DNA of 64,000 nt, from NCBI GenBank assembly GCA_011109175.1, contig RDEW01000001.1:1750360-1814359 (forward strand). The letters are read 5' to 3'. The translations under genes were made by a program, and so were the position numbers. The notes below the pieces were generated by a model. It saw only the letters and a list, made by a program, of their open reading frames with translations, was not told the origin of the DNA and ran no database searches. Origin of the DNA: Dicyema japonicum (taxonomy: Eukaryota; Animalia; Dicyemida). Shown piece after piece: positions 1,145 through 60,278 of this stretch (position 1 is its first letter; each line of letters opens with the position of its first letter).

Positions 1145-2340
1145 ACTTGTAAGTAATATAGAGTAGTCATCGGATCTCTAACGTGGGAGGTGGATAATTG
1201 GTTCTTAACTTCTTTATCGGTGTATCCAGGATAATTAAAAATACCAATAGACACTATACCATTTAATATTAATAGAAAATCTAATTTAACTAAAATAATA
1301 TAAAATATATATTAATTTAAATTATGGTAATTCTTTACTAAATTAAAAAATTAATCAAAAAATTGTAAGAAATTAGCATTATATAAATGGATAGTAATTA
1401 ATGTCCGACTATAAAAGACCATAATATTCACAATGTCAGGTTGTTCGACGGCGGGCAATACGGTATTCTCTAGGAATGTCTTATAGAGCGCCGCTGCCGG
1501 AAAGAGAATACCCTGATTTTAGGGACCCGGAGGAAGTGATCAAAAAGATTCTGAAATTAAGCTAAAGAAGGAGGCACGAAAGACAAAAGAGATAGCAAAC
1601 AATCAGTGGGGGTTCCGTAAAAATAGAGGAACTGAAGACTGCATCCGGGAACTTAGGAAGTCAATTCAAGAATCTATAAGTAAGAAAGAATACCTTACTG
1701 CAACGTGTTTGGACATATCCAAGGCTTTTGACTGTGTCTGGCATGAAGGACTTCTCGAGACATTGTCAAAGGCGAACATTGGAAAGTCGGCGCTCTCCAC
1801 AAGGTTCAATTTTGAGTCCCCTCCTCTTCAACTGTATAATGAGCGAGGTGCCAAAACCGGAACACATCAATACCAAAATGATAATTTATGCAGACGACAA
1901 TATAATTTTGGAAACTAGTATGAATAAATCAATATCATGGAAAAGAACAATAGCTCATATGTCGAAAATCGGAGATTGGTGTCGGAATAATGGATTGACA
2001 TTATCAGGAGAAAAAAGTTCTGTAACCTGGATAGCGAGAAATAGGAGGAATCAATATGTTGATACAGGGAATGTTAAATTCTCGGATGTTATCTGTTATC
2101 TATCAATGTCAGGTTACGAAGTCTTCTATAATTTAGATTCAAATCATTCAATTGAAAAATACAATTCATTATTGTAATAAAATTCCAACTGGAGTATTAT
2201 TTTTCCGAGTTGTAATTATTTGTTTACTTTAGGTAAAATTTGATAAGGGACACATATTCAAACAATTAATGGATCTCAAGTATTCGTTGATATACAAGAA
2301 ATGATAAAATTCAAAAAAATGCAATCACTCAATGCAGAAT
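1145..2340 (+). pseudogene. La-module (LARP4-like) cassette copy C1: upstream region plus La motif exons, interrupted by an RT fragment
   Basis: Collinear with 55268-55815. Encodes a degenerate KFQLEYYFSE..NLIRDTY..LMD..FVDIQEMIKFKKMQSLNA with the 24-nt intron GTTGTAATTATTTGTTTACTTTAG retained. Confidence 0.7.
1443..2103 (+). mobile_element. Internal jockey/CR1-like LINE reverse transcriptase fragment flanked by a 12-bp direct repeat
   Basis: QWGFR, CLDISKAFDCVWH, PQGSILSPLLFN and YADD motifs. CAATGTCAGGTT at 1431-1442 and 2104-2115. Empty sites occur at about 2955 and 55580. Confidence 0.85.
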
Positions 2341-2902: not shown

Positions 2903-4732
2903 AATATGTCTGACTATAAAAGAGGCGGTAAGAGAACGAACCATAATATTCACAATGTCAGGTTGTAAACTCTTCTATAATTTAGATTCAAATCATTCAA
3001 TAGAAAAATTATAATTCATTATTGGAAATAATAAAATTCCAACTGGAGTATTATAGAGTTGTAATTATTTGTTTACTTTAGGGAAAACCTGATTAGAGAC
3101 ACATATTTCACAAATTTAATGGATCTTCATGGGATACGTAGATATCATAAAATTCAACATAATCAAGCACAAAAAAAAATTTGAAAATACACCGTTGGCT
3201 GTTAAAAGCTATTTATTAAATACGTCAACTAAAATTAAATCATGTGAAACTGGCATAAAAAAAACATCCAGATGCCAAATAAGACAACTATAAAAATTCC
3301 TTATAATTTAAGCACAAAGAATTATGAAAGTCGATACTTTTCCCAAGCGGAATAACTGAGCAGCACTGCAAAAAGGCCATCAAAACAGGTTCCGTTAGGA
3401 ATCTACTATAAAGATTCCGTTTAGTTTGAACACAGAGGAGGTAGAGTAAGCATTAATTTTAGGAATTATGGGAGTCAATACTATTCTCATGGGGAATAAC
3501 TGAGCAGCATTGCAAAAAAGCCATCAAAACCGGTTAGTATAATTGGGAGTTATACACCGACGAAATTTTATCCGCGAGGGATTCTGTAAATAAACTCAGG
3601 GAATACAAGGTAATTATTGTAAATATTTTAGTCAAAACTTTTGGAGATACGAAATCCAGCGCAGAAACACACAGAAAATAAGTGTCAGAAAATATAAAAA
3701 CAGGAGAAATAATAATGAAAAAAGATATAAGAATATAGCATAGAAATAATTGACATTGTAGATTGTCTATAATACAAAGACTGGGATACGAATGTATTAA
3801 CAATAAAAAATCGATTGTATTATCGAACAAATACAACAAACTATGATGTAATTAAGAATCCATTGATCAACAACAAAATATGATGTAATTAAAAAATCCT
3901 CACATGACCAAGTACCATAAAATATCTACATATCAAGATTTATATTTTTGGTGATTGAAAAAGCAAGATTTGGTTATTTCCCTCGGTAACTTTATCTGTT
4001 GCAATAATAGCTTATCCAATTGGTCTCCTTAGCGATTATAAGGTAAACTCCCATCAATCAATTCGACTAATATAATAATGAAAATCGGATAAATAGATCC
4101 GAAGAAACATGGATCTCATTATGACAAGAGAAGTAAATTAGTGGAAAACCATGCCTTCATACCCAATGTCTAATATAACTGGTAGGATCAATTCTATTAG
4201 ATAATTCACAAAAGACTCACTTCACTGAAAAACAATAGTTCACAAAAGGATTCATTTATTATTCTGTGTGTAAAATTCAATATTGATTGAAGCTAAAAAA
4301 TCTTCAGTATAAAATTAAATGTTGATTTAAACTAATATATATTTGTTCAATATCATGAATATGTGAAAATACATAATATAGTCTGATTAGTGCAGGAATA
4401 AAGCAAATTCACAAATTGACAGAATGTTCGACAATAACATTCTTCCAATAGCCCTCCAGCACTAATAGAAGATCAGATTTATGATATTGAAGTATATACA
4501 TAAGAAAAAACCAAAAAATAATCTCCTTGAAGATAATCAGCAGTTCATCTAAACAACAAACTAAACCACAAAAATGTGCATAACACATAATCTATTTAGA
4601 ATAGGTTACCACATTATAAATTTTAAATTTAGTAAATTGGTTAAATTTTAATAAATTTTAAATTTAATAATTTGCTAAAATCTTACTGTTAATTTTTAAT
4701 CTGGCTATTATTTTTAATTAAAGTCCTCAATG
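2903..4732 (+). pseudogene. La-module cassette copy C2: La motif, two partial RRM exons and a long degenerate 3' region
   Basis: LLEIIKFQLEYY at about 3020-3055. GITEQHCKKAIKT occurs at about 3350 and 3495. The segment 3500-4732 is a near-identical inverted copy of 20854-22080. Confidence 0.75.
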
Positions 4733-7584: not shown

Positions 7585-7925
7585 ACTTGACATTAAATAT
7601 TGATTAGAATAAACATAAAAGAAAATTAAAATCCAATATTGATTGAAAATAATATAAAAGGAAAATCATGAAACAAATATGATTTTTCAACATCATATAA
7701 GATCATATAAGAATATGTAATATATAGTCTGATTAGTGAAGAATAAAGCAAATTTCAGAAGTTGGCAGAATGTTCGACAGTAGCCAATAGCCCTACAGCA
7801 CAAACAGAAGATCAGATATATGATATTGAAGTATGTAAGAAAAAACTAATAATGTATTTAAAATAGGTTTACCATAATATAATAATTTTAAATTTAATAA
7901 ATTGTTTAAATTTTAAATTTTAATT
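7585..7925 (+). repeat. La-module cassette copy C3 (3' region only, more diverged)
   Basis: ATATAGTCTGATTAGTG..GAATAAAGCAAATT..CAGAATGTTCGACA..CCAATAGCCCT..AGAAGATCAGAT..ATGATATTGAAGTAT matches 4375-4500. Confidence 0.75.
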
Positions 7926-8313: not shown

Positions 8314-8779
8314 TCAATCTTTCTGATCGTGAGTACGCAAAAATAGTTTCCGCATTTTCATTCTACGATTTTGAAACCATATTTTGATTTGCTTCTCTGA
8401 AAGTCGGAGTTGTCGAGAGATTTCCCACCTTTTTTCGCGGGAGAGGTATCGATTGTTATCAAACTCTGATTCCAGGACCAAAATCTGGGATCTCGAATAT
8501 GGTTTCCGTTTTTTGGATTCCTGCTTCAATTCTAAGTAATTTCCATGAAAAACCGTTTTTAAAACTTTCGGGACATTTCGGTATGTACTGTTTGTCGTAA
8601 TTATGGTCCCCCATGTAGTTTTCCTGGCCATATGACGAGTAGTGGTCGTAATAGTAGTAGCCCTCATTCATGTAAGGGTCAGAGTACAAGTCGAAATAGG
8701 GACAGTAGGGGAACTCGTTGGGGTCTTCAGTTCCTCCGTTCATCCGGTTGACGAAATATGCGAAATTTGGATTGTTCAT
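8314..8779 (-). CDS. Post2: Posterior Hox homeodomain protein, Post2-like (2 exons)
   Basis: Homeodomain [56 protein letters not shown] shares KKRKPY, VLE and KRWEIS with spiralian Post2. A Tyr-rich N-terminal exon joins in frame through an intron at 8532-8553 (22 nt) or 8532-8565 (34 nt). The start codon is uncertain. Confidence 0.85.
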
Positions 8780-12199: not shown

Positions 12200-13470
12200 T
12201 CGAAGTCGACTAACCATAAGAGACGAGAACGGTAAGCTGATACTGAACACCGAAGAACAAACTGATGCCATCGCGGCTCACATTGAGAAGCTTTTCAACG
12301 TCAAAACCAATAGAAATCAAACCAATTTGATGGAAAGGCCACCCCCCGGAATCACGCCCGAGGAAATCAAAACGGTCTGTCGAAAACTGAAGAATAACAC
12401 AAGTCAAATAGATTCCGGACTACTAAAAATACGGACCCCACTGCCTGTATGACAAAATTGGAAATGAATGTTTTCTTACCAACAGCACTCTACCTCTGGG
12501 TATGGGACTACTAATCCCCATACAAAAAATCAACAAAACCAGAGGACCGCTCAAAAATTTGCGACCCATTATAAAACTAAATTCATTACGCAAAGTCTTA
12601 GCAAACATTGTGCTTGAACAAATAAAAGGAACTGCTTACAAATACCTACTAGATAGTAAAAGTGGTTTTCGAGAAGGGAGATCCACACTGATGCGGTCTG
12701 GAGTCACAGATAATTTCTGAAGACAAAGAGGTCCTGAAACACCTATTAGAAAAAGCACCAGATGTACTAGGGAAATGGTTTTCTTATGTGAACAGAGAGA
12801 AAACAGAACTCACAGAGATAAAAAATTCCAGTACTTATAAAGTCCTAAAAGAGAATGGCGATAAGTAAAAAAACTCGGTACACTTATGGGAGATAGCGAA
12901 GATATTTTACGTAGGAAAACTCTAGCCAATGCTGCGTTATATAAACTGAAGAATCTATGGCTCAATCATCAAAGAGACATCTACACGAAAATGAGAATCC
13001 TATTGTACGACTCATTCATAAAACCCGTACTTTTATAAAAGCTGAACTTGGGAGAATCATCAGCGGATATGGAAAAATAGACTTGTTCCACAAAAGTCAG
13101 CTGAGAAAAATAACAAGAATTACTTGCTTACGAGAATGTCGAGAAATGCTTTATATAGGAGATGCAGCACTAGACCTATCAGTATAGAAGTACTGGAATC
13201 CCGATGGAAGCTCTTCGGACACGTGCTGACGATGGAATTAACATCCCCACTAAATATATCTATGGAAAAATACTATGTTAGTCAAGAAGGCCGCTATCGT
13301 GAAAGACCTAGAACAAGACTGCCAATAGTTTTACAAAAAAGACCTGGTTAATATAAAAAAATTTTAAAACTGCCGACGACCTGGACAACATGAGAGCCTT
13401 GGCTAGGAACAGGGGGCATGGAAAAGGATGACATCTAACATTGTTTCTTTTGCTGCACACGGGGGGCTAT
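12200..13470 (+). mobile_element. RTE-like LINE, internally deleted and frameshifted
   Basis: GLLIPIQKINKTRGPLKNLRPI, SGFREGRST and LESRWKLFGHVL. The 3' part matches 39808-40369. Confidence 0.8.
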
Positions 13471-19859: not shown

Positions 19860-20515
19860 TTTATTTCTTCGAATGCAGATCGTTCCAAAAAAAAGTGGCA
19901 GCTTTAATAATTCTTTGACATTTAAATCGGAAACCCACTTGTTTGGTGTGTACACAAGAAATTTCAGTGATGCATACAAGCTTTCACCCCATTCTAATGT
20001 TATGGGAGACACAATTGACAGTGGGAAACCCTGAGCATTTTTCTTGTTTAAAAAGTGTAATTTCCACCACATCTAATGTTGACATGAATCGGTATAAAGA
20101 GAAAATTGCAGGATTTCTACGACAGTTTGAGACACGTTTCGATATTTTCCGTGAACTTGAAAATGAATTTACTGTTTTTCGATCGCCATTAACTGCAAAT
20201 ATTACACATCTTGCATCCAAGTTACAATTGGAAATTGTTGATTTGAAATGTGACTCAGATCTGAAGAATAAATTCAACATGGTAGGCTGTGGTAGGCCTA
20301 GGCAGCTTTTATTAATATCTCTTGCCGAAGTATCCCAACTTAACAGCCCTAGCTGCGAAGATTTTGTCCATGTTTGGGAGTACATGTCTATGTAAACAAC
20401 TGTTCTCTTTAATGTTCCCTTTATGACAAAACAAGATTTCGTTCAAGGCTCACACTCTCATCTAAGTGAAATTCTAAGATTGACAGTAACTCAGGATTTT
20501 ACACCAGAAATTACG
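19860..20515 (+). mobile_element. hAT (SPIN/Charlie-like) transposase derivative, left part
   Basis: N-terminal KPTCLVCTQEISV fused to the C-terminal LWETQL..ELENEFTVFRSP..LQLEIVDLKCD..YPNLTALAAKILSMFGST. Confidence 0.8.
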
Positions 20516-20853
20516 CTATTTTTTTATTTTATTTATTTAACCCAGGACCACGGTAAAACAAAACTAATTATCACGTGATCCCGATGCATTTTAACAAAGA
20601 CCTCATCTTTGCCCGTCGTTCTTCCTTCGTGCCCGCGCATGAACGTACAGGACGGCTGCCTGAATAATCAGGGCCAATTTTCCGTGATCTGGAGTCAAGT
20701 CTCATAAGGGCCTCCAGAGGCGTAGGTCCGGGTCGATGATCTTCACAAATCCAACGCTCCGTTACTCTGTAAGCCCTCTTTTGCATTTCCTCAATTTTCC
20801 TCATATTTGTCCAAGATATGGACGGACCCCACGAGGCGCATGCATATGAGAAA
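20516..20853 (-). mobile_element. jockey/CR1-like LINE 3' end with A-rich tail, inserted in the hAT
   Basis: Homologous to 45960-46285 (SWGPSISWTNMRKI). Tail GATCACGTGATAATTAGTTT..AAATAAATAAAATAAAAAA. Confidence 0.75.
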
Positions 20854-22878
20854 CATTGAGGACTTTAATTAAAAATATTTAGCCAGATTAAAAATTAACA
20901 GTAAAATTTTAGCAAATTTCTAAATTTAAAATTTAACCAAATTACTAAATTTAAAATTTATAATATGGTAAACCTATTATAAATAGATTATGTGTTATGC
21001 ACATTTTTGTGGTTTAGTTTGTAGTTTAGATGAACTGCTAATTACCTTCAAGGAGATTATTTTTTGGTTTTTTCTTATGTATATACTTCAATATCATAAA
21101 TCTGATCTTCTATTAGTGCTGGAGGGCTATTGGAAGAATGTTATTGTCGAACATTCTGTCAATTTGTGAATTTGCTTTATTCCTGCACTAATCAGACTAT
21201 ATTATGTATTTTCACATATTCATGATATTGAACAAATATATATTAGTTTAAATCAACATTTAATTTTATACTGAAGATTTTTTAGCTTCAATCAATATTG
21301 AATTTTACACACAGAATAATAAATGAATCCTTTTGTGAACTATTGTTTTTCAGTGAAGTGAGTCTTTTGTGAATTATCTAATAGAATTGATCCTACCAGT
21401 TATATTAGACATTGGTATGAAGGCATGGTTTTCACTAATTTACTTCTCTTGTCATAATTGAGATCCATGTTTCTAAGGATCCATTTATCTGATTTTCATT
21501 ATTATATTAGTCGACTTGATTGATGGGAGTTTACCTTATAATCGCTAAGGAGACCAATTGGATAATCTATTTTTGCAACAGATAAAGTTACCGAGGGAAA
21601 TAACCAAATCTTGCTTTTTCAATCACCAAAAAATATAAATCTTGATATGTAGATATTTTATGGTACTTGGTCATGTGAAGGATTTTTTTAATTACATCAT
21701 ATTTTTGTTGTTGATCAATGGATAAATAAATTACATCATAGTTTGTTGTATTTTGTTCGATAATATAATCGATTTTTTATTGTTAATACATTCGTATCCC
21801 AGTCTTTGTATTATAGACATAATCTACAATATCAATTATTTCTATGCTATATTCTTATATCTTTTTTCATTATTATTCTCCTGTTTTTATATATTTCTGA
21901 CACTTATTTTCTGTGTGTTCTGCGCTGGATTTCGTATCTCCAAAAGTTGTGGCTAAAATATTACAATAATTACCTTGAATTCCCTGAGTTTATTTACAGA
22001 ATCCCTCGCGGATAAAATTTCGCCAGTGTATAACTCCCAGTTATACTTACCGGTTTTGATGGCTTTTTTGCAATGCTGCTCAATATTTAAGTTATATTAA
22101 CTGGAATACACAGAAAACTCTTATCTAATGTTGAGAATGAGCATTAAGTTTTGCTAATTTTTTCAATAAGAAAGTTCAATTAGGATTCAATTTTTATTAT
22201 TAAATAGAAAAATTATGGATAATTAAAAGTTAAGTTTTTTTTGGTTTTTTAATTAATTATTCTTGATTTGGCCGGTTCTATCTTTTTTTACCATTATCTG
22301 TTTTTGGGTCGTATACTGGTCTGGGGCCTTTTATGAACTCCGGTGTTTGATGAATAAGTCGTGACTAAAATATTTACAATAATTACCTGTATTCCCTGAG
22401 TTTATTTACAGAATCCCTTGTCGACGAAATTTCATCGGTGTATAACTCCTAATAATACTTATCGGTTTTTGATGGCTTTTTTTGCAATGCTGCTCAGTTA
22501 TCCCCTTGGAATAGTATTGACTCCATAATTCCTAAAATTAATGCTTACTCTTCCTCCTCTGTGTTCAAAACTAAACGGAATCTTCATAGCAGTCTTATAT
22601 AACAGTCGGCTGGTTTTTAATTTTTCTGGCAGATTGTGTTTGTGCTTGATTATGTTGAATTTTTATAAAAATTTCGTCAGTATAATAACTCCCAGTTATA
22701 CTTATCGGTTTTGATGGCCTTTTTGCAATGCTGCTCAGTTATTCCGCTTGGATAAAAGTATCGACTCCCATAATTTCTTTGTGTTTAAATTATAAGGCTT
22801 CTTTATAGTTGTCTTATATGGCATCTTTATGTTATTTTTATGCCAGTTTCACGTGATTTAATTTTAGTTGACGTATTT
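20854..22878 (-). pseudogene. La-module cassette copy C4: mosaic with three RRM exon copies plus 3' region
   Basis: Inverted matches to 3215-3400, 55900-56465 and 3500-4732 in series. Micro-introns GTAGAGTAAGCATTAATTTTAG-like and GTAATTATTGTAAATATTTTAG are retained. Confidence 0.75.
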
Positions 22879-23062
22879 ACATCTGTGGAAAGGGATGCCG
22901 ACCTTGTATAACTTCAAGGTGACTGTCTTCCTTCCCAATTTTTTTGTCCGAGGTAAATAGTGACGTATACGACTTCTCTGCATTTACCACGAGCCGGTTT
23001 TCCATTATCCAGGCATTAAGCCTGTCCAGGATAATTTGTATTCTTTCTGTGGCCCTCTGGAT
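22879..23062 (-). mobile_element. Upstream half of the LINE whose 3' end is at 20516-20853
   Basis: Homologous to 45760-45930 (LDRLNAWIMEN..NAEKS). Confidence 0.75.
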
Positions 23063-36760: not shown

Positions 36761-36835
36761 TATATCTCAAGTGATGTCATAGAATAGTGACGATGACGTA
36801 TAAGAGGATTATTGGAAGAAAAAGACATAATACTA

Positions 36836-37655
36836 CACTCAATTCCATAAATGTTGACCCAATTCCCATAAATGATGACCCAATTCCAATAAATGATGAC
36901 CCAATTCCAATTAATGTTGACCCAATTCCCATAAATGTTGACCCAATTTCCGTAAATGATGTCCAAATTATATATATAAATAATACACGAGTAAATCTAT
37001 ATTTTAATTTCCTATTATGGTATCAACTATTACAGATATGAGAAGTCGCAAGGTTTTTATGAACGAAAGTCTATTTAATCAAATTAAAAGACTTTATAAA
37101 GTTAAAACAAAAGAAGAGTTGATTGAGATCACCTCGATCAGCAAAAAGAGTTTGAACAGGTGTATACAAAAGATCGAAAGCTGTGAACTCGAGGATCCTA
37201 CTTTCGGTGATCTTTACAAAACAGTAGGCCGAAAAAAGAAAGATAAAGAAATGTTGAATGTCGAAATGAGATCTATTTTTGGAAATGACAACTCGCTGAC
37301 ACAAGTTGGTCTTCAAGAAAAACTTTCAGTGAATCTTTCTAAGTCTCAAATTTCAAGAGATTTAAAGGAGGCCTGCATCACAAGAAAAAGACTCAAGAAA
37401 AGGTCCGAAGTTAGATTGAGTACAGAAAATTTGGCAGAAAGGGGAGTATTTTCATCAAGAATGTTAGGAGAATTGCTAACAAATATCGGATTTGTTATGA
37501 GTGGTCTCGAATCCGAGAATTTGTCCTCATATTACAACAGTTTTTAGGAAAGGGTAAATGGAATTAATAACAGATTAATTGAATAAAATACTTTTTTCCT
37601 AAATTATTTATTAGTATGATATATATAACTTGGACATCATTTATGGGATTGAGTG
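36836..37655 (+). mobile_element. Tc1/IS630-type TIR element, internally deleted (no DDE domain)
   Basis: TA flanks at both ends and TIR CACTCAATCCCATAAATGATGTCCAAGTTATATATAT. ORF 37017-37547 has an HTH region (SLTQVGLQEKLSVNLSKSQISRDLKEACITRKRL) fused to the C-terminal ENLSSYYN. Confidence 0.85.
36841..36964. repeat. 21-bp tandem array (about 6 units) inside the left TIR
   Basis: Unit AATTCCCATAAATG(A/T)TGACCC is part of the TIR sequence. Confidence 0.9.
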
Positions 37656-38199: not shown

Positions 38200-41100
38200 A
38201 AGCCTTAGGAAATCTATTCAGTCATTTGAGGATGAGAATCTTTTTTTTTATTTCCTCTCGAAAGCGACATTAGTTAGTGTATTCATTTTGTTGAAAGCGA
38301 CATTAGTTAGTGTCTTCCTTCGTGTTATATCTTCGGTGTCACCGAGAAGGGATCCTAGTTTTTTGATCTACGCCAGTCCTCCTCAGTCCTTTCCTCACTT
38401 CTTTTTAGCTCAGTGATTTCGGTTTTGTTTGTGTTTACTTTTAATGACCATTCAGCTACTTTCTCCAAAAGTGCAATTAACTCTTCTTTGTTGTTCGAAA
38501 TAAAGTCCACGTCATCCGCATATGCTATTATGCTCGATATGAGGCAAGTCTCGTAGAGCTGCCTCCAGATAAATAATAAACAAAATCGGGGAATGGATCT
38601 CTTGAGGGGTACCAATTTCGTTTCAAATGTCCTCGATAAAGCTTTCCCAGTCCTGACCATCAAGCTTGAGTCTGTCAAGAGTGTCCTGACCATCCTAATC
38701 GTTGAGCCTTCCAAGAAGTACTCCAGTATTTGCAGCAGCTTGTTTTTGTTGATGGAATCAAGGCCTTTGACACATCAATCCCAGAATGGTTGTCGTTATT
38801 TTAAATTTTTTGAACAGTCGCACTTCTCCATTTGTGGCTCCATATAACATCTTACGTTGATCTCCCTTTCGGAAGCCACTTTGATAAGCCGACAGGTACG
38901 AGTCTAGGCGTCCCTCCATTCTTTGAAGCGTAATATTGGCTAGTATCTTCCGTAATGTGTTAATAAGACCACTGGTCTTAGGTTCCCAACTTTCCCCGCT
39001 TTTTTGCTTGGCTTCTGTACTGGTGTCAATAGTCCTTCTCCAAGTGGCAAGGTGGCTCCTTTACTGTACGTTTTGTTTAGAATCCAGGCAATTATCTTGT
39101 ATAGCTTTTGAGTTCCATATTTGAAAAATTCACCATTTAAGCCATCTGGGCCGGGACTTTTGTTGTCTTTGAGTTTGAAACTCGCTGTCATCACTTCTTC
39201 CAAAGTTATTTCTTCGTCTAATTTTCCCTGATTCGTGTTAATGTGAGTTTTTTGCTATTTTTTGATACGAATTGTGGTTCAAAATAGTCCGCTATAAGTT
39301 CTGCAATTTCTTGTTGGTTAGAATATTTTTCCTTCTACATCTCGTAAAGTCAGTGTTTTCCTTGGTAGTTTTCTGATTTGTCCGACAGCTTCATAAAACT
39401 TCGCATTGTCTTTAAGGCCTTCGATTTTCTCTATTTTTGTTATTGTTTCGTTCTTTAATGTTCGACGTGCAGCTTTTCTTATTTTCTTTTTGATGACTGT
39501 TCTTTCCTCTTGTAGCCGCTGTTTCGTATTTTTGTCATCTGTAGACATTGTGTCCATATCGCCTTTTGATTAGCAAGGAGTTTCAAAGCGGTTATTTTTT
39601 CAGTGGGTGCATTAGTTACGTAGTCCTCTTAGATATGTATCCGCAGCAATCATAATCTTCTGTTTGACCAAGGTCCACGCAGTTTGCGGTGCCTCATCCA
39701 GGTATTTTCTAAACTCCTCTCTCTGGATAGTATTGTTCTTTAGAAGTCTATGACGTATCTCTTCCCCTGCAGTTCCGTGTGTCCATTGCACTTTCCTTTC
39801 ATCCCTTATTTATTATTATTTAAGCACTTCACAAGAGCCATACTAATTATAGCCCGCATATGCAGCAAAAGAAACAAGGTTAGATGTCATCCTTTTCCAT
39901 GCTCCCCTGTTCCTAGCCAAGGCTCTCATGCTGTCCAGGTCGTCGGCATTTGTTAGATTTTTTTATACTGACCAGGTCTTTTTGTAAGACTATTGGCAGT
40001 GTTGTTCTTGGTCTTCCCCGATAGCGGCCTTCTTTACTAACATAGTATGTTTCCATAGATATGTTCGGTGGGGAAGTTAATTCCATCCTCAGCACGTGTC
40101 CGAAGAGCCTCCATCGGGATTCCAGTACTTCTAAGCTGATAGGTCTAGTGCTGCATCTCTTATATAAAGCATTCCTAGATATTCTCGTAGGCCAAGTAGT
40201 TCCTGTTATTTTTCTCAGCTGACCTCTGTGGAACGAGTCTAGTTTTTTTCATATCCGCTGATGAGGTCGCCCAAGTTCCAGCGTTATATAAAAGTACGGG
40301 TTTTATGAATGAGTCGTATAGTAGGATTCTCATTTTCGTGTCGATGCCTTTTTGATTGAGCCATAAACTCTTTCATCCCTTGCAAACCCATAAGTTTCTT
40401 AAGGACATTTTGGCAATAACCATCTTGTGATCGCTGTCAATTATAGACCCTCCATAAGCACGGGCATCAGTTACAATACTGCGGTCTTTTTGTCTGCAAA
40501 TAATGTAGTCTATTTGATTGTAGATTTTCGCAATGCTTCCCTCAGACTTAGTTCTATTGCCTGACCGAGTTGTCCTGTATCTTGCCGAGTGCATAAAGGC
40601 CGTGTTACAAAGGAATAGGTTATTTGCTTGACAAAAGCTGGCTAACAAGGTTCCAGCAATGTTCCTTTTCCCCTTCCATGTCTTCCAATGAATGATTCTT
40701 CTATAGTGATTCGATTTCCAACTTTTGCATTGAGATCACCGGCAATCAATATTAATGTGGAATTTTCATAATTGGAATAAATATCAACAGATTCGCATCT
40801 CCTTGAATTTCTTATTGATCCATCCACTATGTGGAGCATATGCGTTAATAATAGTAAGATAACTCTTGGGAGAGTTATGATCGTCCAATGTTATTTGTAA
40901 AATCCCAATCCTTTCATTGATAGTCCAGTAACGGTATATGCGCCGGAGTAGGTCCTTTCTTACAGCAAATCCAAGTCCGTAATGTTTTGATCCCCCAAAG
41001 TGAAAGATTAACTGAAACTTTCCGTGTTGTTCTTCAAACTCCTTCGATATTTTTGTCTCTTGGAGACATCTGATTAATATCTTAAATTTTGAAAGGTCTT

Positions 41101-51400: not shown

Positions 51401-51526
51401 TTATAAATAGTCCAATAAATAATAGTCTAAACATCTTCAACCCTTGAAAGACCCAACTGCTAATTCACCGTATCCCTTCCTCAAATCAGAGACAGTAAAA
51501 CACTAGATAAAACCACGTTCTATTAT

Positions 51527-52076
51527 TATTATTTAAGCACTTCACAAGAGCCATACTAATTATAGCCCGCATGTGCAGCAAAAGAAACAAGGTTAGATGT
51601 CATCCTTTCCATGCTCCCTGTTCCTAGCCAAGGCTCTCATGCTGTCCAGGTCGTCGGCATTTGTTAGATTTTTTTTATACTGACCAGGTCTTTTTGTAAG
51701 ACTATTGGCAGTGTTGTTCTTGGTCTTCCCCGATAGCGGCCTTCTTGGCTAACATAGTATGTTTCCATAGATATGTTCGGTGGGGAAGTTAATTCCATCC
51801 TCAGCACGTGTCCGAAGAGCTTCCATCGGGATTCCAGTACTTCTAAGCTGATAGGTCTAGTGCTGCATCTCTTATATAAAGCATTCCTAGATATTCTCGT
51901 AGGCCAAGTAGTTCCTGTTATTTTTCTCAGCTGACCTCTGTGGAACGAGTCTAGTTTTTTCATATCCGCTGATGAGGTCGCCCAAGTTCCAGCGTTATAT
52001 AAAAGTACGGGTTTTATGAATGAGTCGTATAGTAGGATTCTCATTTTCGTGTCGATGCCTTTTTGATTGAGCCATA
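51527..52076 (-). mobile_element. Young 5'-truncated RTE copy
   Basis: Near-identical to 39808-40369. 12-bp TSD ACGTTCTATTAT at 51515-51526 and 52077-52088. Confidence 0.9.
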
Positions 52077-52535
52077 ACGTTCTATTATAAATTCAAATTT
52101 TTTAATATCCTAACAAATTTAGAAATTATTCACATTTATTATTCGAAGCAAGAAATCACCGATATTTATCAGGGAAAAGACATTAGATGAGCCATCTCTC
52201 AGTAGCCTCTTCATCTTTGCTCAGTGTTCTATAAAACCCACGATACTCTCATCACTAGCGGATTTACTAACCACCGAGACACAGACAAAAAGTTGAGGTT
52301 GACACTACTATAGTATTACGAAAAAAGATAAAGAACAAAGGAAAGGAGGAAAACCTTCGACCAAATACCCTGTAGGAAACGAATCCAGGACCAATGTCTA
52401 TAGTAAGACATCCTAACAACTCACAGATAGGAGATTAAAACCACGGTTGTTTTCCTAATTAAAATTATAAATTAAAAATTAAATCTACAAATAATTTAAT
52501 TATTAAATTTAAATCACAACACGTGCTAGTTATTC

Positions 52536-52965
52536 ATGGTTTGTTGAAATTATTGAATTTCGTAGGGAAGAGTCAGAAATTTCACAATAAAATCTGCATC
52601 TAAAAGGTTAATCGAGATGCACTATACTCGATTGTCCACGGATTTCCAAGAAAACAAAATGGTAGTCAACAACGTAGCAATCACCCCCAGCAAGAAGATG
52701 AGGAATAAAATAGCAGGATTCACGACTCATCTAATGAAACGAATAGCTAAGGGACGTGTTCGAGGAATATCCTTAAAACTCCAGGAAGAAGAGCGAGAAA
52801 GGAGAGATAACTATGTCCCTACTGTACTTGTCTGGATTCACTCTTTAGATTTCTGAACTTGACATTGACGTGACCCTCGACGACCGAACCAGGGCAATGC
52901 TCGAAAATTATGTTAGGATTTTGCTTATTTGTTAGGGACTGGCTCTCCCGGTTAGGGGAATTTGA
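52536..52965 (+). CDS. RPS17: 40S ribosomal protein S17 (4 exons; first exon is ATG only)
   Basis: [43 protein letters not shown]. Introns of 27, 25 and 24 nt. Confidence 0.96.
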
Positions 52966-53062
52966 TTGACTTCTTTTTTACTTATTGGTTTAATTTCTCT
53001 GTTATTTGAATTTATTCTAATTTTTACTTGACTTTCTTAGCTCTCTATAATTCCCGTAATTT

Positions 53063-53345
53063 TAGGATATGTAGTACAATGGTCCCAGGTTGATTCCCCT
53101 TCTGGATATTTTAGGATCTGTAGTACAATGGTCCCAGGTTGATCCCCCTTCTGGATATTTTCGGATCTGTAGTACAATGGTCCCAGGTTGATCCCCCTTC
53201 TGGATATTTTAGGATCTGTAGTACAATGGTCTCAGGTTGATCCCCCTTCTGGATATTTTCGGATCTGTAGTACAATGGTCCCAGGTTGATCCCCCTTCTA
53301 GATATTTTAGGATATGTAGTACAATTGTCCCAGGTTGATCCCCCC
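53063..53345. repeat. 49-bp minisatellite, about 5.8 units
   Basis: Unit T(A/C)GGAT(A/C)TGTAGTACAATGGTCCCAGGTTGATCCCCCTTCTGGATATTT starts at 53063, 53112, 53161, 53210, 53259 and 53308. Confidence 0.95.
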
Positions 53346-53349
53346 TCGG

Positions 53350-53480
53350 AGGTTTCTCTTCCTATTCTCTGTTTCCTATTTTTTCCTTCTATAGAGTGGT
53401 GTCACGTGATCCACCTATCTCAGGTGCCTGGATGACATACAATGATCATTTGCCCTCACCCAATCCATTGGAGGTCTTTT
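53350..53480 (+). mobile_element. SINE-like family A core
   Basis: TAGAGTGGTGTCACGTGATCCACCT..CAGGTG..ACAATGATCATTTG. Confidence 0.6.
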
Positions 53481-54419: not shown

Positions 54420-54950
54420 TTGGCAAACTTGGAATCAGTATCCCAGGAAGTGTGATTTGTAGACATCCACAGAAACCTGATTCAGTGTCAATGAGGAACT
54501 CCTCCATTGCTATATTAGATGGGGGTGTCCATTTTCAATCTCAGTATATGCCCGAAGAGCCTCCATCTCAAATCAGTGATCTCGAGACTTAAAAAACCAG
54601 TGGAGCAAACATTATATAAAGCTTCTTGTTTATTTTCCTTGGCTAAATCAATCCGAGCATTGTCCTCATCTGCCTTCGATGAAAGGTATCTATCCCCCCG
54701 TTCCTCAGCATTGGATACTGCCCACGTTGATGAATTATATAATAGGACTGGTTTAACAAGGGCATTGTATAGCCTTCGCCGGAATGATGTACTTGATCGT
54801 CTTCCGTCAATCCAGTTCTTTTTAACTTTGGTCTCACATGAGATTTTTAACCCTCTCATGCTACGCCAATCTTCAATGGTGCACATATTCAGCCTCCTTT
54901 CAGAGAGAACTGAATTCTTGGACGCGTCCACTAAAATGATCATTATAACT
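54420..54950 (-). mobile_element. RTE-like LINE C-terminal fragment
   Basis: RRLYNALVKPVLLYNSSTW and RWRLFGHILRL. Confidence 0.75.
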
Positions 54951-54969
54951 TGGTGGTTTAGGTGAACTC

Positions 54970-55265
54970 ACCTGGGACCTCCTTGATAAGTGAGATCCCA
55001 CTGGAGACATTTCCTTAGATATCCTTTCGGTTAAGAAATGTTTTTATCCAACTAAACAGATACTTCAGAACATCCGCCGACACAAGCTTGAAGAGCTTCG
55101 TGGCAAACACTGTCCTGGAATATCCAGGCATAACAGGTTCATTTCGACTATCAATGGCCTTCTGGGCTTAAGAATTTAGCAGGAAGAAACAGTCTTCACA
55201 CGACCTTGCTTGACGAAAGCCCTATTGGTGCGGCAAAAAATTAGTTTGAAGATAATCCCCTCTAT
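54970..55265 (-). mobile_element. jockey/CR1-like RT relic
   Basis: GFRQARSCEDCFFLLNS..CLDI..DSVCHEAL, homologous to 35022-35420. Confidence 0.6.
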
Positions 55266-55580
55266 TATCTTGTAAATGTTATCGGATAGTCTCTTGGCTT
55301 TTGTAACATGGGAGGAGGAGGTTGTTAACTTCTTCACCGGTGTATCCAGGATAATTAAAAATACCAATAGGGACTTATACCATTAAGTATTAATAGAAAT
55401 TATAATTTAACTAAAAGAATATAAAATATATATTAATTTAAATTATGGTAATTTTTTACTAAATTAAAAAATTAATCAAAAAATTGTAAGAAATTAGCAT
55501 TATATAAATGGATAGTAATTAAAAGTTCCTTATGTCCGACTATAAAAGAGGCGGTAAGAGAACAAACCATAATATTCACA

Positions 55581-56275
55581 ATGTCAGGTTCTGAAGTCTT
55601 CTATAATTTAGATTCAAATCATTCAATTGAAAAATACAATTCGTTGTTAGAAATATAAAATTCCAACTGGAGTATTATTTTTCCGAGTTGTAATTATTTG
55701 TTTACTTTAGGGAAAATTTGATAAGAGACACATAATTAAAAAATTTAATAGATCATAAAGGTTTTGTGGAAATACAAGAAATATTAAAATTCAAAAAATT
55801 GTATCGCTCAATGCATCTGATAACGACGTTGTTTTGGGTGTTAAAAGTTGTCTATCAAATAAGTCTTAGGGTCTATTAAAATTAAATTAAGTGAATCTGC
55901 CAGAAAAATAAAAACCAGCCGACTGTTATATAAGACTACTATAAAGATTCCGTTTAGTTTGAACACAGAGGAGGTAGAGTAAGCATTAATTTTAGGAATT
56001 ATAGGAGTCAATACTATTCCCAAGGGGAATAACTGAGCAGCATTGCAAAAAAGCTATCAAAACCGGTGAGTATAACTGGGAGTTATATACTGACGAAATT
56101 TCGTCCGCAAGGGATTCTGTAAATAAACTCAGGGAATACAAGGTAATTATTGTAAATATTTTAGTCACGACTTATTCATCAATCACCGGAGTTTATAAAA
56201 GGCCCCAGACCAGTATACGACCCAAAAACAGATAATGGTAAAATACGACAGAACCGGCCAAATAAGAAAAATTAA
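55581..56275 (+). pseudogene. La-module (La motif plus RRM, LARP4-like) pseudogene, most complete copy C5 (cassette about 55268-56465)
   Basis: Five micro-introns (24, 24, 23, 22 and 22 nt) give LLEI.KFQLEYYFSEENLIRDT*LKNLIDHKGFVEIQEILKFKK..VVLGVKRSIKIKLSESARKIK..IPFSLNTEEELxESILFPRG..EYNWELYTDEISSARDSVNKLREYK. Lesions include a frameshift at about 55655, TAA at 55733-55735 and a frameshift at about 55802. Confidence 0.8.
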
Positions 56276-56844
56276 TTAAATAACCAAAGAAACTTAACTT
56301 TTAATTATCTATAATTTTTCTATTTAATAATTAAATTAAATTTCTAAATGTTTTTTTCACTACAATTCTGTTCGCTTGTATTTTCTTATTGAAGAAATGA
56401 GCAAAACTTAATGCTCATTCTCAACATTAGATAAGAGTTCTCTGTGTATTGCAGTTAACATAACTCCAATGTCATTTCCGTTTACAGGTTTGTGTTTTCT
56501 TGTTTACTGTTTTCCGAATCTTCTAACGAATTTTCATTAATTGTTTCACATGTACTGTATTCGATATTCAACAAACCTCAACTTAAGGATCGAAAATGTT
56601 TGTTCTTCCGATTGCTTGACGTTAATATCCTGATTTCCGTTGTTGGGATTATTACAAATTCTGCAACAATTATCTCGTCGGATAAGTCTTCCCATGTAAT
56701 TGGAGTCAATCCTTGCAGTCAATTTCTTGCAAGAATTGTATAGAGTAGAATACATCCCTGCCACCAGGGAATAGTAATGTAAACCTCAGCTTAGGCAGAA
56801 CTCACACTTTATTTAAAAAGTAAAAACAGTCATGCTAACTAATC

Positions 56845-57020
56845 CAAATGTTCTTGTTTTTTCTTGTGTGTGAGTCCTAGAAGACAATCGGGTTCTGCAG
56901 TGATATACACTGATGACGGCGTTACTCGTCAACTCAGAAGCATCGCAGATGCATGGAATCTTCAAACGAATGGACATCAGCGAGATTCGAACTCGAGACC
57001 TCCTGGTTTTGCAGGCTTGC
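56845..57020 (-). mobile_element. tRNA-derived SINE family B
   Basis: B-box GAGTTCGAATC, a body matching 60585-60715, and an A-rich tail. Confidence 0.7.
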
Positions 57021-57699
57021 AGGAATGTGGTAACATTTGTTTTTTTAATTCTTGAGTTGTACATCAAAATGAATCTGCCTATCCATAAATATCCAGTCAT
57101 CCAACTATAGTAGGAGGAATTCTTGGTCTCATACTTTTTAAAACATCTACGAATTCTTGGTCTTGCAATCCTCACTGGTTTCAACGTAAGTCTTTCGGTC
57201 ATGTTGAATCATAACAGGGACATGGTCTTAAAATTTTGTAGGATTGTAATTTTTTTTGACCCCACAAGCAAGGAAGCACAAGTAAATTCGAGAGAGGAAC
57301 TGATGATGATTAAGTGCTCATCAACTATAGAAAGAGGATCTAATATTACAAAGAAAGGGCGGAATCCTGGGGGATCTAAAAGCAAGGACACATATGACCT
57401 GCAATCGCTGGGTTTTTAACTTTAAAAAATCACGCAACTACGATGTGCTTGCTGACGAGCTAAAGCTATTTCGTGGCTCCAGTGATATTGATTATCTTAG
57501 CAGTGATGGTGTGATCTCTAAGCGATACAAAAATTATGGATGTGTTATCGATTGATGATGTGACATGCGTCCAAGTTATGCTTAAGAAGACACTCAAGAG
57601 CATGCTTATCGAGCACTTTGGAAGAGGAATTAACATCAATATCTAATCAGTTGTTGGATATGACAACTCACTATGGTGAGGACATGGATTTTAATCTTA

Positions 57700-58593: not shown

Positions 58594-60278
58594 ATGTTAA
58601 GCCTTACTCTGCGATCATATAAAGTTCAGAAGACGGCAATGGTTGTTCTGGTCTTATTTTCCATGGTCTTCTGGGTCTCCTATTGGCGCAGAAGATCTTG
58701 CCCTGTTTTAAGTTCTCCGATCAAGACTGTCCATCTTCTGTCATCCACTAATGATTCCTGTGCAGAAACTCTTATGGGAGATTACCCTGTTGATATTTTT
58801 GATTTGTGTGCCAGAAGAAAGGGAGCCGTGATTCTCCACATATTCGGGGTTGTTTACATGTTCACAGCCCTGGCAATTGTCTGCGACACCTATTTTGTTC
58901 CCTCCCTCGAAGTCCTAATAGAAAAGATGAAGATCAGTGAGGACGTCGCTGGAGCCACATTCATGGCTGCCGGAGGAAGTGCTCCTGAACTGTTTACATC
59001 GATAATTGGAGTATTCCTGGCCAAAAGCAATGTAGGTATTGGAACCATTATTGGGTCGGCAGTATTCAACATTTTGTTTGTGATCAGTGTGTGTGCTCTG
59101 TCAAGTCTTACGGTCCTCACATTGACTTGGTGGCCTTTATTCAGGGACATGGGATTCTACATTATCTCCCTCATCATGCTGATCATCTTTTTCTTGGACA
59201 GTCAGATTTACTGGTGGGAGGCTCTGATCCTCTTTTTGTGGTACTTTACCTACGTGGTGTTCATGAAGTTCAACGTTCAGATAGAACAGTGGGTCAAGAC
59301 TAATATTCTAAGACAAAAATCATCAGAAATTAAAAAACAGCCCAGAGTAGTGTCCATTTAACTAACTAGAACTCAATCTGCTTCATGAGGGAGAGCTTCA
59401 GCCACTATAGACTCTCAAACGTGCTTCCCATCCACGGTAAACATGTCTATAACTGTAGCCAAAAAATCTTCCATCAATATGATCCGCAGGAAGAGCAGTG
59501 TAGCCCCCCAGAATGTAAGATGATTGATTTATGATATTAGGATGATAAATGTGATGAATCAGAACAAGTAAGCTCATTAATCACGATAGGATGAATATAT
59601 TGAGTGGTACAAATGGCCTGACACAACCATGGGGAAGATTTATTACGTCCTCCTGTTCCCCATCAACCTGGTCCTTAGTCTAACAATCCCCAACGTTATG
59701 AACGAGGTTATTGGGTCGTTTAAGGGCTTAGAAAATGAAGAAGCTGTATGTATTGACGTTTACGAACAGTATATTATGGATTGGAATGTTCTCCTACCTG
59801 ATGGTGTGGTGGGCCAACCAAATTGGGAGCACTTTTGGAATACCAAACGAGGTACTTTGCTCTGAGATCGCAGGTTATGGGACTCACGTTTCTTGCGGCA
59901 GGGACCAGCATCCCGGATTTGATAACAAGCTATATTGTGGCCAAAAAGGGCTTTGGGGACATGGCTGTGTCAAGTTCTATTGGGAGCAATCTCTTCGACG
60001 TCTGTGTGGGGTATGTGATTTAGTTACCGCCAAGTCTTCCGTTTCCGTGGTTGATATCCTGGATGGTGTTCCGAGTCCCCATAAACACGAGCAGTAAGGG
60101 ACTATTCTGTTCAGTATTAATGCTCTTCTCCATGCTTACCAGCGTCATAATAATCATCGGCATCTCCAAATGGAAGATGACGAAGGCTCTGGGCATCTCA
60201 ATGCTGGTGGCTTACGGATTCTTCATAGCTCTGTCCCTTATGCTGGAATACGGAGTGATTGGATGTATAATCACGTAA
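58594..60278 (+). CDS. K+-dependent Na+/Ca2+ exchanger (SLC24/NCKX family), 8 exons
   Basis: alpha-1 repeat [33 protein letters not shown], alpha-2 repeat [14 protein letters not shown] (Asp linked to K+ dependence retained) and [12 protein letters not shown]. Introns of 23, 22, 26, 22, 25, 22 and 24 nt. Confidence 0.94.

What the first reader, a model, noticed from the sequence alone, without database searches (positions are those of the whole stretch)
55268..56465. Hidden amplified family of a stand-alone La-module (LaM plus RRM) gene
What looks like AT-rich junk splices through 22-24 nt introns into a protein of roughly 195 aa. The hand-built consensus across copies is MSDSNHSIEKYNSLLEIIKFQLEYYFSEENLIRDTYLKNLMDHKGFVEIQEILKFKKMQSLNASDNDVVLGVKRSIKIKLSESARKIKTSRLLYKTTIKIPFSLNTEEELWESILFPRGITEQHCKKAIKTGEYNWELYTDEISSARDSVNKLREYK plus a basic tail. 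The La motif is clear, and NWxL..A..LRE resembles the LARP4 RRM. Pieces recur at 1145-2340, 2903-4732, 7585-7925, 20854-22878 (minus), 55268-56465 and probably 740-850. At least two paralog types exist, with different exons after the same last intron. All copies here are broken. LARPs are usually low-copy RNA-binding genes, so this many dispersed intron-retaining copies in 64 kb suggests either a lineage-specific birth-and-death family or a host RNA-binding gene carried by an unrecognised DNA-level mobile unit (inference).
Basis: partly seen in the sequence, partly recalled or inferred. Interest (0 to 1): 0.78.

Follow-up and report, generated by a model that had tools for sequence, protein, structure and literature searches.

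The report
Dicyemid mini La-protein gene family
The window holds decayed copies of a real gene for a small La-type RNA-binding protein. The gene belongs to a family that I found only in the tiny octopus parasite Dicyema japonicum. The copies look like ordinary duplication and decay of DNA segments, not a new jumping element.

Summary
Window 55581-56275 is a five-exon gene copy with GT-AG introns of 24, 23, 22 and 22 nt. It is broken by two stop codons and two 1-nt deletions. An intact 193-aa copy lies on scaffold C311.

Exon 2 alone passes Pfam's La threshold. The genome is the published Dicyema japonicum assembly, where tiny introns are normal.

Six loci on six scaffolds have open five-exon models with conserved exon lengths. 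One of them, 20 kb beyond the window, is already in GenBank as a 277-aa spliced "hypothetical protein" (BAH29741.1).

An AlphaFold model of that protein shows a confident La motif followed by an RRM-like beta-alpha-beta-beta-alpha domain. Its sequence has no other true relative among 1.84 billion representative proteins.

The window's "amplified" type has only three near-full copies genome-wide, plus local fragments. Their ends are ragged. They have no terminal repeats or target duplications, and each has its own lesions. LINEs have inserted into two of them.

The best reading is a lineage-specific birth-and-death family of mini La-related proteins. The window copies are pseudogenes made by segmental duplication in repeat-rich DNA. 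A mobile carrier is not supported.

The parts
55581..56275 (+). Near-full-length pseudogene copy of the mini La-module gene. It has five exons and introns at 55687-55710, 55847-55869, 55974-55995 and 56143-56164.
   Evidence: Aligned with intact copy L003 and with L002. Lesions: -1 nt at ~55649, TAA at 55733, -1 nt at ~55794, TAG at 56002. The usual stop is lost, so the reading runs on to TAA at 56273-56275.
55340..55580 (+). AT-rich upstream region duplicated with the gene. TATAAAAG lies at 55541-55548, 33-40 nt before the ATG.
   Evidence: Conserved in all three near-full copies. A promoter role is inferred, not tested.
54915..56728 (.). Largest extent of the block shared with the two other near-full copies (C1:1.573 Mb and C311:0.24 Mb).
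   Evidence: Window versus C1:1573k matches 54915-56522. Window versus C311 matches 55023-56728, interrupted in C311 by a 3.45-kb insertion at ~55406-55426. The ends are ragged and no target duplication was seen.
56324..57237 (.). Truncated copy of a high-copy dispersed repeat that abuts the 3' end of the gene. The junction is shared by all three young copies.
   Evidence: Dozens of matches at 70-80% identity begin at ~56324. Other copies of the repeat run ~140 bp further, so the repeat is truncated here.
1179..1442 (+). Upstream region and start codon of a second young copy. A retroelement fragment separates it from the rest of that copy.
   Evidence: 84% identical to 55304-55590.
1443..2103 (+). 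Reverse-transcriptase-bearing LINE fragment inserted at the start codon of that copy.
   Evidence: ORF 1728-2177 hits RVT_1 at 53.8 bits. The La sequence on either side overlaps by ~12 bp (55579-55590), as a target duplication would.
2104..2336 (+). Exon 1, intron 1 and part of exon 2 of that copy. It is broken by a 4-nt deletion in exon 1.
   Evidence: 88% identical to 55579-55815. Exon peptides found; lesion seen.
2905..3390 (+). Older, more decayed copy (second type) covering exons 1 to 4.
   Evidence: 74% identical to 55531-56067. Frameshifts in exon 1. Exon peptides found.
3403..3640 (+). Fragment with the end of exon 3, intron 3, exon 4 (one stop) and intron 4.
   Evidence: 94.5% identical to 55936-56173.
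3641..4732 (+). Different sequence after the same last intron, with a short alternative last exon followed by non-coding DNA. A 96% identical inverted copy lies at 20854-21944.
   Evidence: (I1, I5, I15). There are only two near-complete copies genome-wide, both in this window.
20857..22875 (-). Inverted mosaic of La fragments: the alternative 3' region; exon 4 at 21944-22082; exons 3 to 5 plus flank at 22090-22635; second-type exons 3 and 4 at 22669-22872. The mosaic replaces 167 bp inside a young ~0.7-kb high-copy repeat.
   Evidence: The flanks 20507-20856 and 22876-23062 lie 167-168 bp apart in other copies of the repeat.
7626..7851 (+). Weak copy of part of the non-coding alternative 3' region. 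It holds no La coding sequence.
   Evidence: 74% identical to 4271-4517 (D17, 88). No exon-peptide hit.

Best explanation
The window holds dead copies of one young branch of a gene family known only from Dicyema japonicum. The genes encode small La-related proteins of about 190-300 aa. Each has a La motif followed directly by a divergent RRM-like domain (a minimal La module) and a short, variable, probably disordered tail.

The family arose by repeated DNA-level gene duplication, which kept the introns and the promoter-like upstream region. Older members on other scaffolds stay open, and at least one exists as a spliced product in GenBank. They most likely bind RNA 3' ends or single-stranded U/A stretches through the conserved La pocket; this is inferred.

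The young branch was copied as ragged genomic segments within repeat-rich DNA of scaffolds C1 and C311. Each copy then decayed on its own or was hit by LINE insertions. Only the C311 copy still has an open frame.
For: Shown here:
- The genome is the published D. japonicum assembly: 67.5 Mb, 377 scaffolds, 49% repeats, tiny introns.
- The La motif passes Pfam's threshold on exon 2 alone (41.6 bits) and on the GenBank member P0001 (60.6 bits). Structural alignment of the model gives Z 12-13 and rmsd ~1.5 A to the La motifs of LARP7, LARP1 and La.
- The AlphaFold model of P0001 has pLDDT 80-96 over residues 1-150, with strand 85-92, helix 100-111, strands 118-122 and 127-132 and helix 135-156 after the La motif.
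- Foldseek's best hits are La modules of La, LARP7 and LARP4A, aligned over 150-175 columns.
- The model aligns with the LARP4A La module over 151 residues at Z 10.1. The second domain alone matches RRM-like folds (DbpA RNA-binding domain, PARN RRM, GUCT) at Z 7-8.
- Six loci have open five-exon models with exon 2 = 137 nt in all, exon 3 = 101-113 nt, exon 4 = 141-147 nt and introns of 20-32 nt.
- P0001 maps to locus L035 as seven exons with 22-24-nt gaps.
- Genome-wide there are 10 La-HMM loci, of which one is canonical, and 17 exon-4-like pieces.
- The exon-4 profile finds only P0001 plus one spurious pentaxin among 1.84 billion representatives. Word searches find nothing else.
- In the young branch, pN/pS is ~0.5, the lesions are independent, the block ends are ragged and LINE insertions with short flanking duplications have hit two copies.

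Inferred: RNA-binding function, a promoter within the duplicated unit, and segmental duplication as the copying process.
Against: - No RNA-seq could be consulted, so expression and splicing of the C311 copy and of most paralogues are unproven.
- The origin of the GenBank record (cDNA or modelled coding sequence) could not be checked.
- The RRM call rests on one model built from a shallow alignment. Its fold matches are middling (Z 7-8), the fourth strand is of low confidence, and no RRM profile matches.
- One paralogue (L032) has no open path through exon 3.
- The La mosaic at 20857-22875 sits inside a repeat copy in place of 167 bp. Simple segmental duplication does not explain this neatly.
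- "Dicyema only" depends on how few dicyemid and orthonectid proteins the databases hold.
Confidence: 0.8

Rival explanations
1. The young La unit is cargo of a mobile element. It could be a gene captured by a Helitron- or Pack-type DNA transposon. It could also be an antisense passenger of LINE 3' transduction, which would keep its introns.
For: - The unit is always flanked by repeat DNA, and all three copies share a junction with a truncated high-copy repeat at ~56324.
- The C1:1573k copy has a run of 7 T at its far end.
- One mosaic lies inside a young repeat.
- The C311 copy is bracketed by 100-bp direct repeats that are 93% identical.
Against: - There are only three near-full copies, on two scaffolds.
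- The ends differ between copies on both sides.
- No target duplications or inverted termini were seen.
- The C311 copy has no T or A run at its junctions.
- Its 100-bp flanking repeats belong to an unrelated high-copy element.
- No transposase or reverse transcriptase lies inside the unit.
- The flanking repeat is itself truncated by ~140 bp.
Confidence: 0.1
2. Part of the local repetition is an assembly artefact, such as collapsed or misjoined haplotypes or repeats. In that case the real number of fragments in the window would be smaller.
For: - The two arms 4163-4607 and 20971-21415 are 99% identical and inverted.
- The published assembly has a 4.1% gap rate and is built from 1,965 contigs joined into scaffolds.
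Against: - Most copies differ by 5-26% and carry their own indels and insertions. An artefact would not produce that.
- The diverged paralogues lie on separate scaffolds.
Confidence: 0.05
3. The window copies are still functional genes, read through recoding (stop read-through or frameshifting) or through splice sites not considered here.
For: - pN/pS among the young copies is below 1.
- Their introns are better conserved than their exons: 0-2 changes in 91 nt versus 5-9%.
Against: - The 55.6-kb copy has four independent lesions of different kinds.
- The other copies are truncated, rearranged or split by a LINE.
- The intact C311 copy and the GenBank member use the standard code with no internal stops.
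Confidence: 0.03

Closest known systems
BAH29741.1 / UniRef100_B9ZYX8, 'hypothetical protein [Dicyema japonicum]', annotated as HTH La-type RNA-binding domain-containing
   Same: It is a member of this same family and the spliced product of the paralogue at C1:~1.8346 Mb, 20 kb past the window. It shares the exon structure, the La motif and the exon-4 domain: 77 bits to the family profile, with exons 2 and 3 identical to the L035 genomic reading.
   Different: It is only 33-48% identical to the window's type in exons 2 and 4. It is longer (277 aa, seven exons) and has a different proline/glutamine-rich tail.
Genuine La and LARP7 (La module = La motif + RRM1)
   Same: These are the best sequence matches of the La motif: LARP7 37.5 bits and La 29-34 bits. 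Structural Z is 12-13. Foldseek aligns both domains in order, over 166-175 columns. The pocket residues seen in the alignments are kept: Q/Y, Y, Y, D, F/Y/H and F.
   Different: There is no second RRM (xRRM), and nothing but La is found by Pfam. The second domain matches no RRM profile. The proteins are half the size or less. A separate canonical La/LARP7-like gene exists on scaffold C334.
LARP4 / LARP4A La module (PDB 6I9B)
   Same: It is the only solved La module that superposes on both domains of the model at once: 151 residues, Z 10.1, rmsd 5.2 A. The protein-atlas search by features puts an 'RRM_LARP4' cluster first for residues 84-160, but at 0.78, which is below the trust level.
   Different: The La-motif sequence match is weaker than for LARP7 and La (25.9 bits). 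The Pfam model RRM_LARP4 (PF26088) is not in the local library, so membership could not be tested. A PAM2w motif was not looked for.
Gene fragments captured and spread by DNA transposons (Pack-MULEs, Helitrons), or carried by LINE 3' transduction
   Same: The copies are dispersed, retain their introns and are partly truncated. They are host-gene copies embedded in repeat DNA.
   Different: There are no shared termini, target duplications or element-encoded proteins, and the copy number is very low.

Membership tests
La-related protein (LARP) superfamily | A La motif (winged helix) recognised by Pfam PF05383 above its gathering score | tested here: met
   Exon 2 of the intact copy scores 41.6 bits against a cut-off of 37.1. 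P0001 scores 60.6 bits. Structural Z is 12-13 to solved La motifs.
La-related protein (LARP) superfamily | An RRM1 directly after the La motif, which together form a La module | tested here: inconclusive
   The model of P0001 shows beta-alpha-beta-beta-alpha at residues 85-156 with pLDDT 83-94. Both domains align with La modules. The domain alone matches RRM-like folds only at Z 7-8. Exons 3 to 5 have no RRM profile or PDB sequence hit. The model of exon 4 alone gives helix-strand-strand-helix, and its fold search found nothing.
La-related protein (LARP) superfamily | Conserved RNA 3'-end pocket residues of the La motif (Q20, Y23, Y24, D33, F35, F55 of human La; numbering from general knowledge) | tested here: met
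   The alignments show Q (Y in two paralogues), Y, Y, invariant D, F/Y/H and invariant F. RNA binding itself was not tested.
LARP4 | A LARP4-type RRM (Pfam RRM_LARP4, PF26088) and a PAM2w motif | not testable with these tools
   PF26088 is absent from the local Pfam copy. There are only weak leads: an atlas score of 0.78 and the two-domain superposition on 6I9B.
Genuine La / LARP7 | A C-terminal second RRM (xRRM, Pfam RRM_3) | tested here: not met
   Pfam finds only La in P0001, even at E <= 10. Residues 184-272 are predicted to be disordered.
LARP1 | The DM15 / LARP1_HEAT region (PF21071) | tested here: not met
   It is not found in P0001. It was also not found anywhere in the genome by exon-wise search, but that search had no positive control.
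Transposable element or transposon-carried cargo | Copies that share exact termini, with target-site duplications and/or terminal repeats | tested here: not met
   The block ends at 54915 or 55023 on the left and at 56522 or 56728 on the right. The junction sequences show no duplication. No inverted termini were found.
Transposable element or transposon-carried cargo | Many dispersed copies | tested here: not met
   There are three near-full copies plus fragments, all on scaffolds C1 and C311. The many other hits belong to the flanking repeat only.
Processed retrocopy | Loss of introns and a poly(A) tail | tested here: not met
   All four introns and the upstream region are retained in every near-full copy.

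The most novel reading that the evidence does not exclude
These proteins form an orphan clade of La-related proteins outside the recognised families. It has grown to at least six open genes in an animal with only about 5,000 genes. Exon-wise profile searches in the same genome detect one canonical La/LARP7-like gene and no LARP1 DM15 region. If so, a set of minimal La modules with fast-evolving RRM-like domains may have taken over the mRNA-binding roles of LARP1, LARP4 and LARP6 in a radically reduced parasite.
Probability: 0.25. Interest if true: 0.55.

Novelty: new member of a known kind. Interest (0 to 1): 0.36.

Why it matters
La-related proteins are usually few and conserved, and each is tied to a defined RNA class. 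This is a family of stripped-down La modules, apparently multiplied in one of the most reduced animal genomes. Its second domain is too diverged for sequence searches to recognise.

- For people who study La-related proteins, it offers natural "minimal La modules" on which to test what sets RNA specificity.
- For dicyemid biology, it points to lineage-specific post-transcriptional control.
- For annotation, it is a practical warning: in this genome real genes with 20-30-nt introns look like AT-rich junk, and their dead copies can be taken for transposons.

It does not reveal a new kind of mobile element.

Tried and rejected
- **Ciliate origin.** I first took the tiny introns for a ciliate genome. 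The assembly statistics and the taxon of P0001 point to Dicyema japonicum instead.
- **Shared inactivating deletion.** A pairwise alignment suggested a deletion in exon 1 shared by the window copy and L002, which would mean dead copies went on duplicating. A five-copy alignment shows different indels in each copy, so I dropped this.
- **LINE 3' transduction.** I tested it on the junctions. There are no target duplications, the C311 copy has no A/T run, and the flanking repeat is itself truncated.
- **Reverse-transcriptase remnant on the left flank.** The left flank (54900-55300, minus strand) looked like one by eye, but Pfam finds nothing. It is only a low-identity dispersed repeat.
- **Searches that found nothing useful.**
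  - Exon-4 profile against PDB sequences: nothing.
  - Protein atlas on exon 4: nothing.
  - Foldseek on the 49-residue exon-4 model: nothing useful.
  - Word searches with the L035 open frame and with P0001: only P0001 itself.
  - P0002, a pentaxin repeat protein, is a spurious sum of short W-x-V-Y-T-D matches.
- **CACGTG counts.** As a marker of host DNA they were uninformative here.
- **Mixed alignment.** An alignment of P0001 with all exon pieces misplaced exons 1 and 3. Only the exon 2 and exon 4 rows were used for folding.
- **Literature.** I found no paper that links La-related proteins and dicyemids. The two Lu et al. 2019 papers and their held supplements do not mention La.
- The joined spliced proteins of L003 and of the other paralogues were not sent to any search or folding tool. 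They were searched exon by exon, by reference. Joined translations were made only inside scripts to check that the reading frames stay open.

Full report
**What the region is.** Window 55268-56465 holds an AT-rich stretch of about 31% G+C. It reads as a five-exon gene with GT-AG introns of 24, 23, 22 and 22 nt. The window copy is dead. It has a 1-nt deletion in exon 1 (~55649), TAA in place of TAT at 55733, a 1-nt deletion in exon 2 (~55794) and TAG in place of TGG at 56002.

Two other near-full copies exist in the assembly. One is at C1:1.573 Mb (L002, 92% identical, two 1-nt deletions in exon 1). The other is at C311:0.24 Mb (L003, 91% identical). In L003 the same exon structure gives an uninterrupted 193-codon reading that ends in TAG.

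**Which genome.** The assembly has 67,542,437 bases in 377 pieces. These are the figures of the Dicyema japonicum genome of Lu et al. 2019, which report 67.5 Mb, 377 scaffolds, 36.7% G+C, 49% repeats and 5,012 genes (PMC6736024). Earlier notes of this scan named the same animal. The one database protein that matches the family is from D. japonicum. Tiny introns are therefore the rule in this genome, not a peculiarity of this gene. The neighbouring Na/Ca-exchanger gene shows them too.

**La motif.** I searched the spliced model exon by exon, by reference. Exon 2 of L003 (45 aa) alone scores 41.6 bits on Pfam La PF05383, above the cut-off of 37.1. Exons 1, 3, 4 and 5 match nothing. A profile of exon 2 from eight family members finds the La motifs of S. 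pombe Slr1, LARP7, La and LARP1 among solved structures.

**The family is wider and older than the window suggests.**
- The La profile run over the whole genome gives ten loci. One, on scaffold C334, is a canonical La/LARP7-like gene. The other nine belong to this family.
- Exon peptides of L003 find all the homologous exons, in the same order, at C279, C1:1.8346 Mb, C343, C212, C363 and C13. Identity is 29-56%.
- Six loci (L003, L035, L036, L037, L039, L040) have fully open five-exon models that start at an ATG. Exon 2 is exactly 137 nt in all six. Exon 3 is 101-113 nt, exon 4 is 141-147 nt and the introns are 20-32 nt.
- L032 is open in exons 1, 2, 4 and 5, but I found no open path through exon 3.
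- A profile of exon 4 finds 17 pieces genome-wide, including three further partial loci on C348, C140 and C331.

**Relatives outside this genome.** I ran the exon-4 profile with HMMER against 1.84 billion representative proteins. This was justified because the family scans left that half of the protein open and the "lineage-specific" claim rests on absence of relatives. It found two proteins.
- P0002 is a five-fold pentaxin repeat protein, a spurious sum of short matches.
- P0001 (77 bits) is BAH29741.1 / UniRef100_B9ZYX8, "hypothetical protein [Dicyema japonicum]", 277 aa. UniProt annotates it as containing an HTH La-type RNA-binding domain.

P0001 is the spliced product of the paralogue L035, which lies 20 kb beyond the end of the window. 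It maps as seven exons separated by gaps of 22-24 nt. In exons 2 and 3 it is identical to the genomic reading, and it lacks the 24-nt intron 2. So one member was already public, although I found no paper that discusses it. Two word-index searches found nothing else.

**Second domain.** Because P0001 is a database protein, it could be folded whole. I used an alignment of P0001 with the exon 2 and exon 4 pieces of the paralogues (A5).
- AlphaFold gives pLDDT 80-96 for residues 1-150. It shows a La-motif fold, then strand 85-92, helix 100-111, strands 118-122 and 127-132, and helix 135-156. The tail is disordered.
- Foldseek's best hits are La modules of human La, LARP7 and LARP4A, aligned over 150-175 columns, that is, both domains in order.
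- VIA-align gives Z 12-13 (rmsd ~1.5 A, 80-85 residues) for the La motif. It gives Z 10.1 (151 residues, rmsd 5.2 A) for the whole LARP4A La module. For residues 85-200 alone it gives Z 7-8 to RRM-like or ferredoxin-like domains: the DbpA RNA-binding domain, the PARN RRM, GUCT and ACT. That level is common for this fold class.
- Exon 4 folded alone gives helix-strand-strand-helix.

I therefore read the protein as a minimal La module. The RRM call is supported by predicted structure and by position, not by sequence.

**Which LARP family.** By sequence the La motif is closest to LARP7 (37.5 bits) and La. LARP4 is lower, at 25.9 bits. A protein-atlas lead to "RRM_LARP4" scored 0.78, below the level that can be trusted. 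That Pfam model is not in the local library. Assignment to one of the recognised LARP families stays open.

**Is the young type mobile?** The evidence says no.
- *Copy number.* The 1.2-kb unit has three near-full copies and a handful of fragments, all on C1 and C311. The dozens of other hits belong only to positions 1057-1198 of the query, which is a separate high-copy repeat.
- *Ends.* The block shared with C1:1573k runs from 54915 to 56522. The block shared with C311 runs from 55023 to 56728. The junctions show no target duplication and no inverted termini.
- *Content.* The block is a piece of ordinary repeat-rich genome: a low-identity dispersed repeat on the left, then the gene with its upstream region and TATA-like box, then a truncated high-copy repeat on the right. 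That repeat lacks its terminal ~140 bp, and the junction is shared by all three copies.
- *Retroelement insertions into the copies.* A 660-bp reverse-transcriptase fragment sits at the start codon of the copy at 1179-2336, with a ~12-bp overlap of the flanks. A 3.45-kb element with reverse transcriptase sits about 175-185 bp upstream of the ATG of the intact C311 copy, with a ~15-20-bp overlap of the flanks.
- *Lesions.* The lesions in exon 1 differ in every copy, so each copy was inactivated on its own.
- *Selection.* pN/pS among the three near-full copies is about 0.5. The four introns show 0-2 changes in 91 nt, against 5-9% in the exons. This is weak evidence that the copies were under some constraint for part of their history.

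All this fits gene birth and death by segmental duplication.

**What stays untidy.** The minus-strand mosaic at 20857-22875 is a rearranged copy of 3217-4732 with an extra 550-bp La piece. Another first-stage note calls this a nesting inside a LINE inside a hAT element. I confirmed only that it lies inside a repeat, and that it has neither a clean insertion signature nor a target duplication. Filler DNA copied in during break repair would fit, but that is inference.

**Limits.**
- The joined spliced proteins of L003 and the other paralogues were not sent to any search or fold tool. They were searched exon by exon. Joined readings were made only inside scripts to check that the frames stay open.
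- No RNA-seq was available.

**Verdict.** The gene is a real, lineage-restricted member of the La-related protein superfamily, and one paralogue is already deposited. The window's copies are pseudogenes of a small, recently duplicated branch. The exciting alternative, a new DNA-level mobile unit, is not supported. The remaining interest lies in an apparently orphan, expanded set of minimal La modules in a very reduced animal genome.

Noticed in passing
window 20507-20856 and 22876-23062: A young repeat of about 0.7 kb, with about 970 first-look candidates genome-wide at 91-98% identity. It has no Pfam-recognisable ORF nearby. Its class (SINE, MITE or LINE tail) was not determined.
   Followed up: partly
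L046:628-3829 (C311:240627-243828): A 3.45-kb retroelement upstream of the intact La copy, with two long open frames (581 aa with an RVT_1 hit, and 453 aa with no hit). A ~15-20-bp overlap of the flanking sequence looks like a target duplication.
   Followed up: partly
window 55687-56164 (the four introns) compared with L002 and L003: The tiny introns of the three young copies are more conserved than the exons around them: 0-2 changes in 91 nt against 5-9%. Either ultra-short introns are under strong sequence constraint, or AT-rich sequence mutates less here.
   Followed up: partly
window 13008-13046 (+), 40287-40316 (-), 51998-52027 (-): A short peptide resembling the start of exon 5 (R-L-I-H-K-T-R-T-F-I) occurs in three copies of another repeat family in the window (39810-40366, 51523-52077, 12968-13424). 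It is weak (E 0.02-0.5) and possibly chance.
   Followed up: no
window 53010-53396 and 36826-36990: Tandem arrays with periods of 49 bp (six or more copies) and 21 bp (six copies).
   Followed up: no
window 8314-8667 (-), 52617-52856 (+), 58594-60270 (+): Host genes in the window: a homeodomain exon (78.8 bits), a ribosomal protein S17e exon (117 bits) and a Na/Ca exchanger gene with tiny introns.
   Followed up: partly
L031 (C334:1087829-1088023): The only canonical-looking La motif in the genome (69.7 bits). It is split by a tiny in-frame-stop intron and resembles genuine La or LARP7. No LARP1 DM15 region was detectable by exon-wise search.
   Followed up: partly
L042:9151-9250 and L046:4495-4594 (C311): Direct repeats of 100 bp, 93% identical, bracket the C311 La copy together with its LINE insertion. 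They belong to another dispersed repeat with 125 or more candidates.
   Followed up: partly
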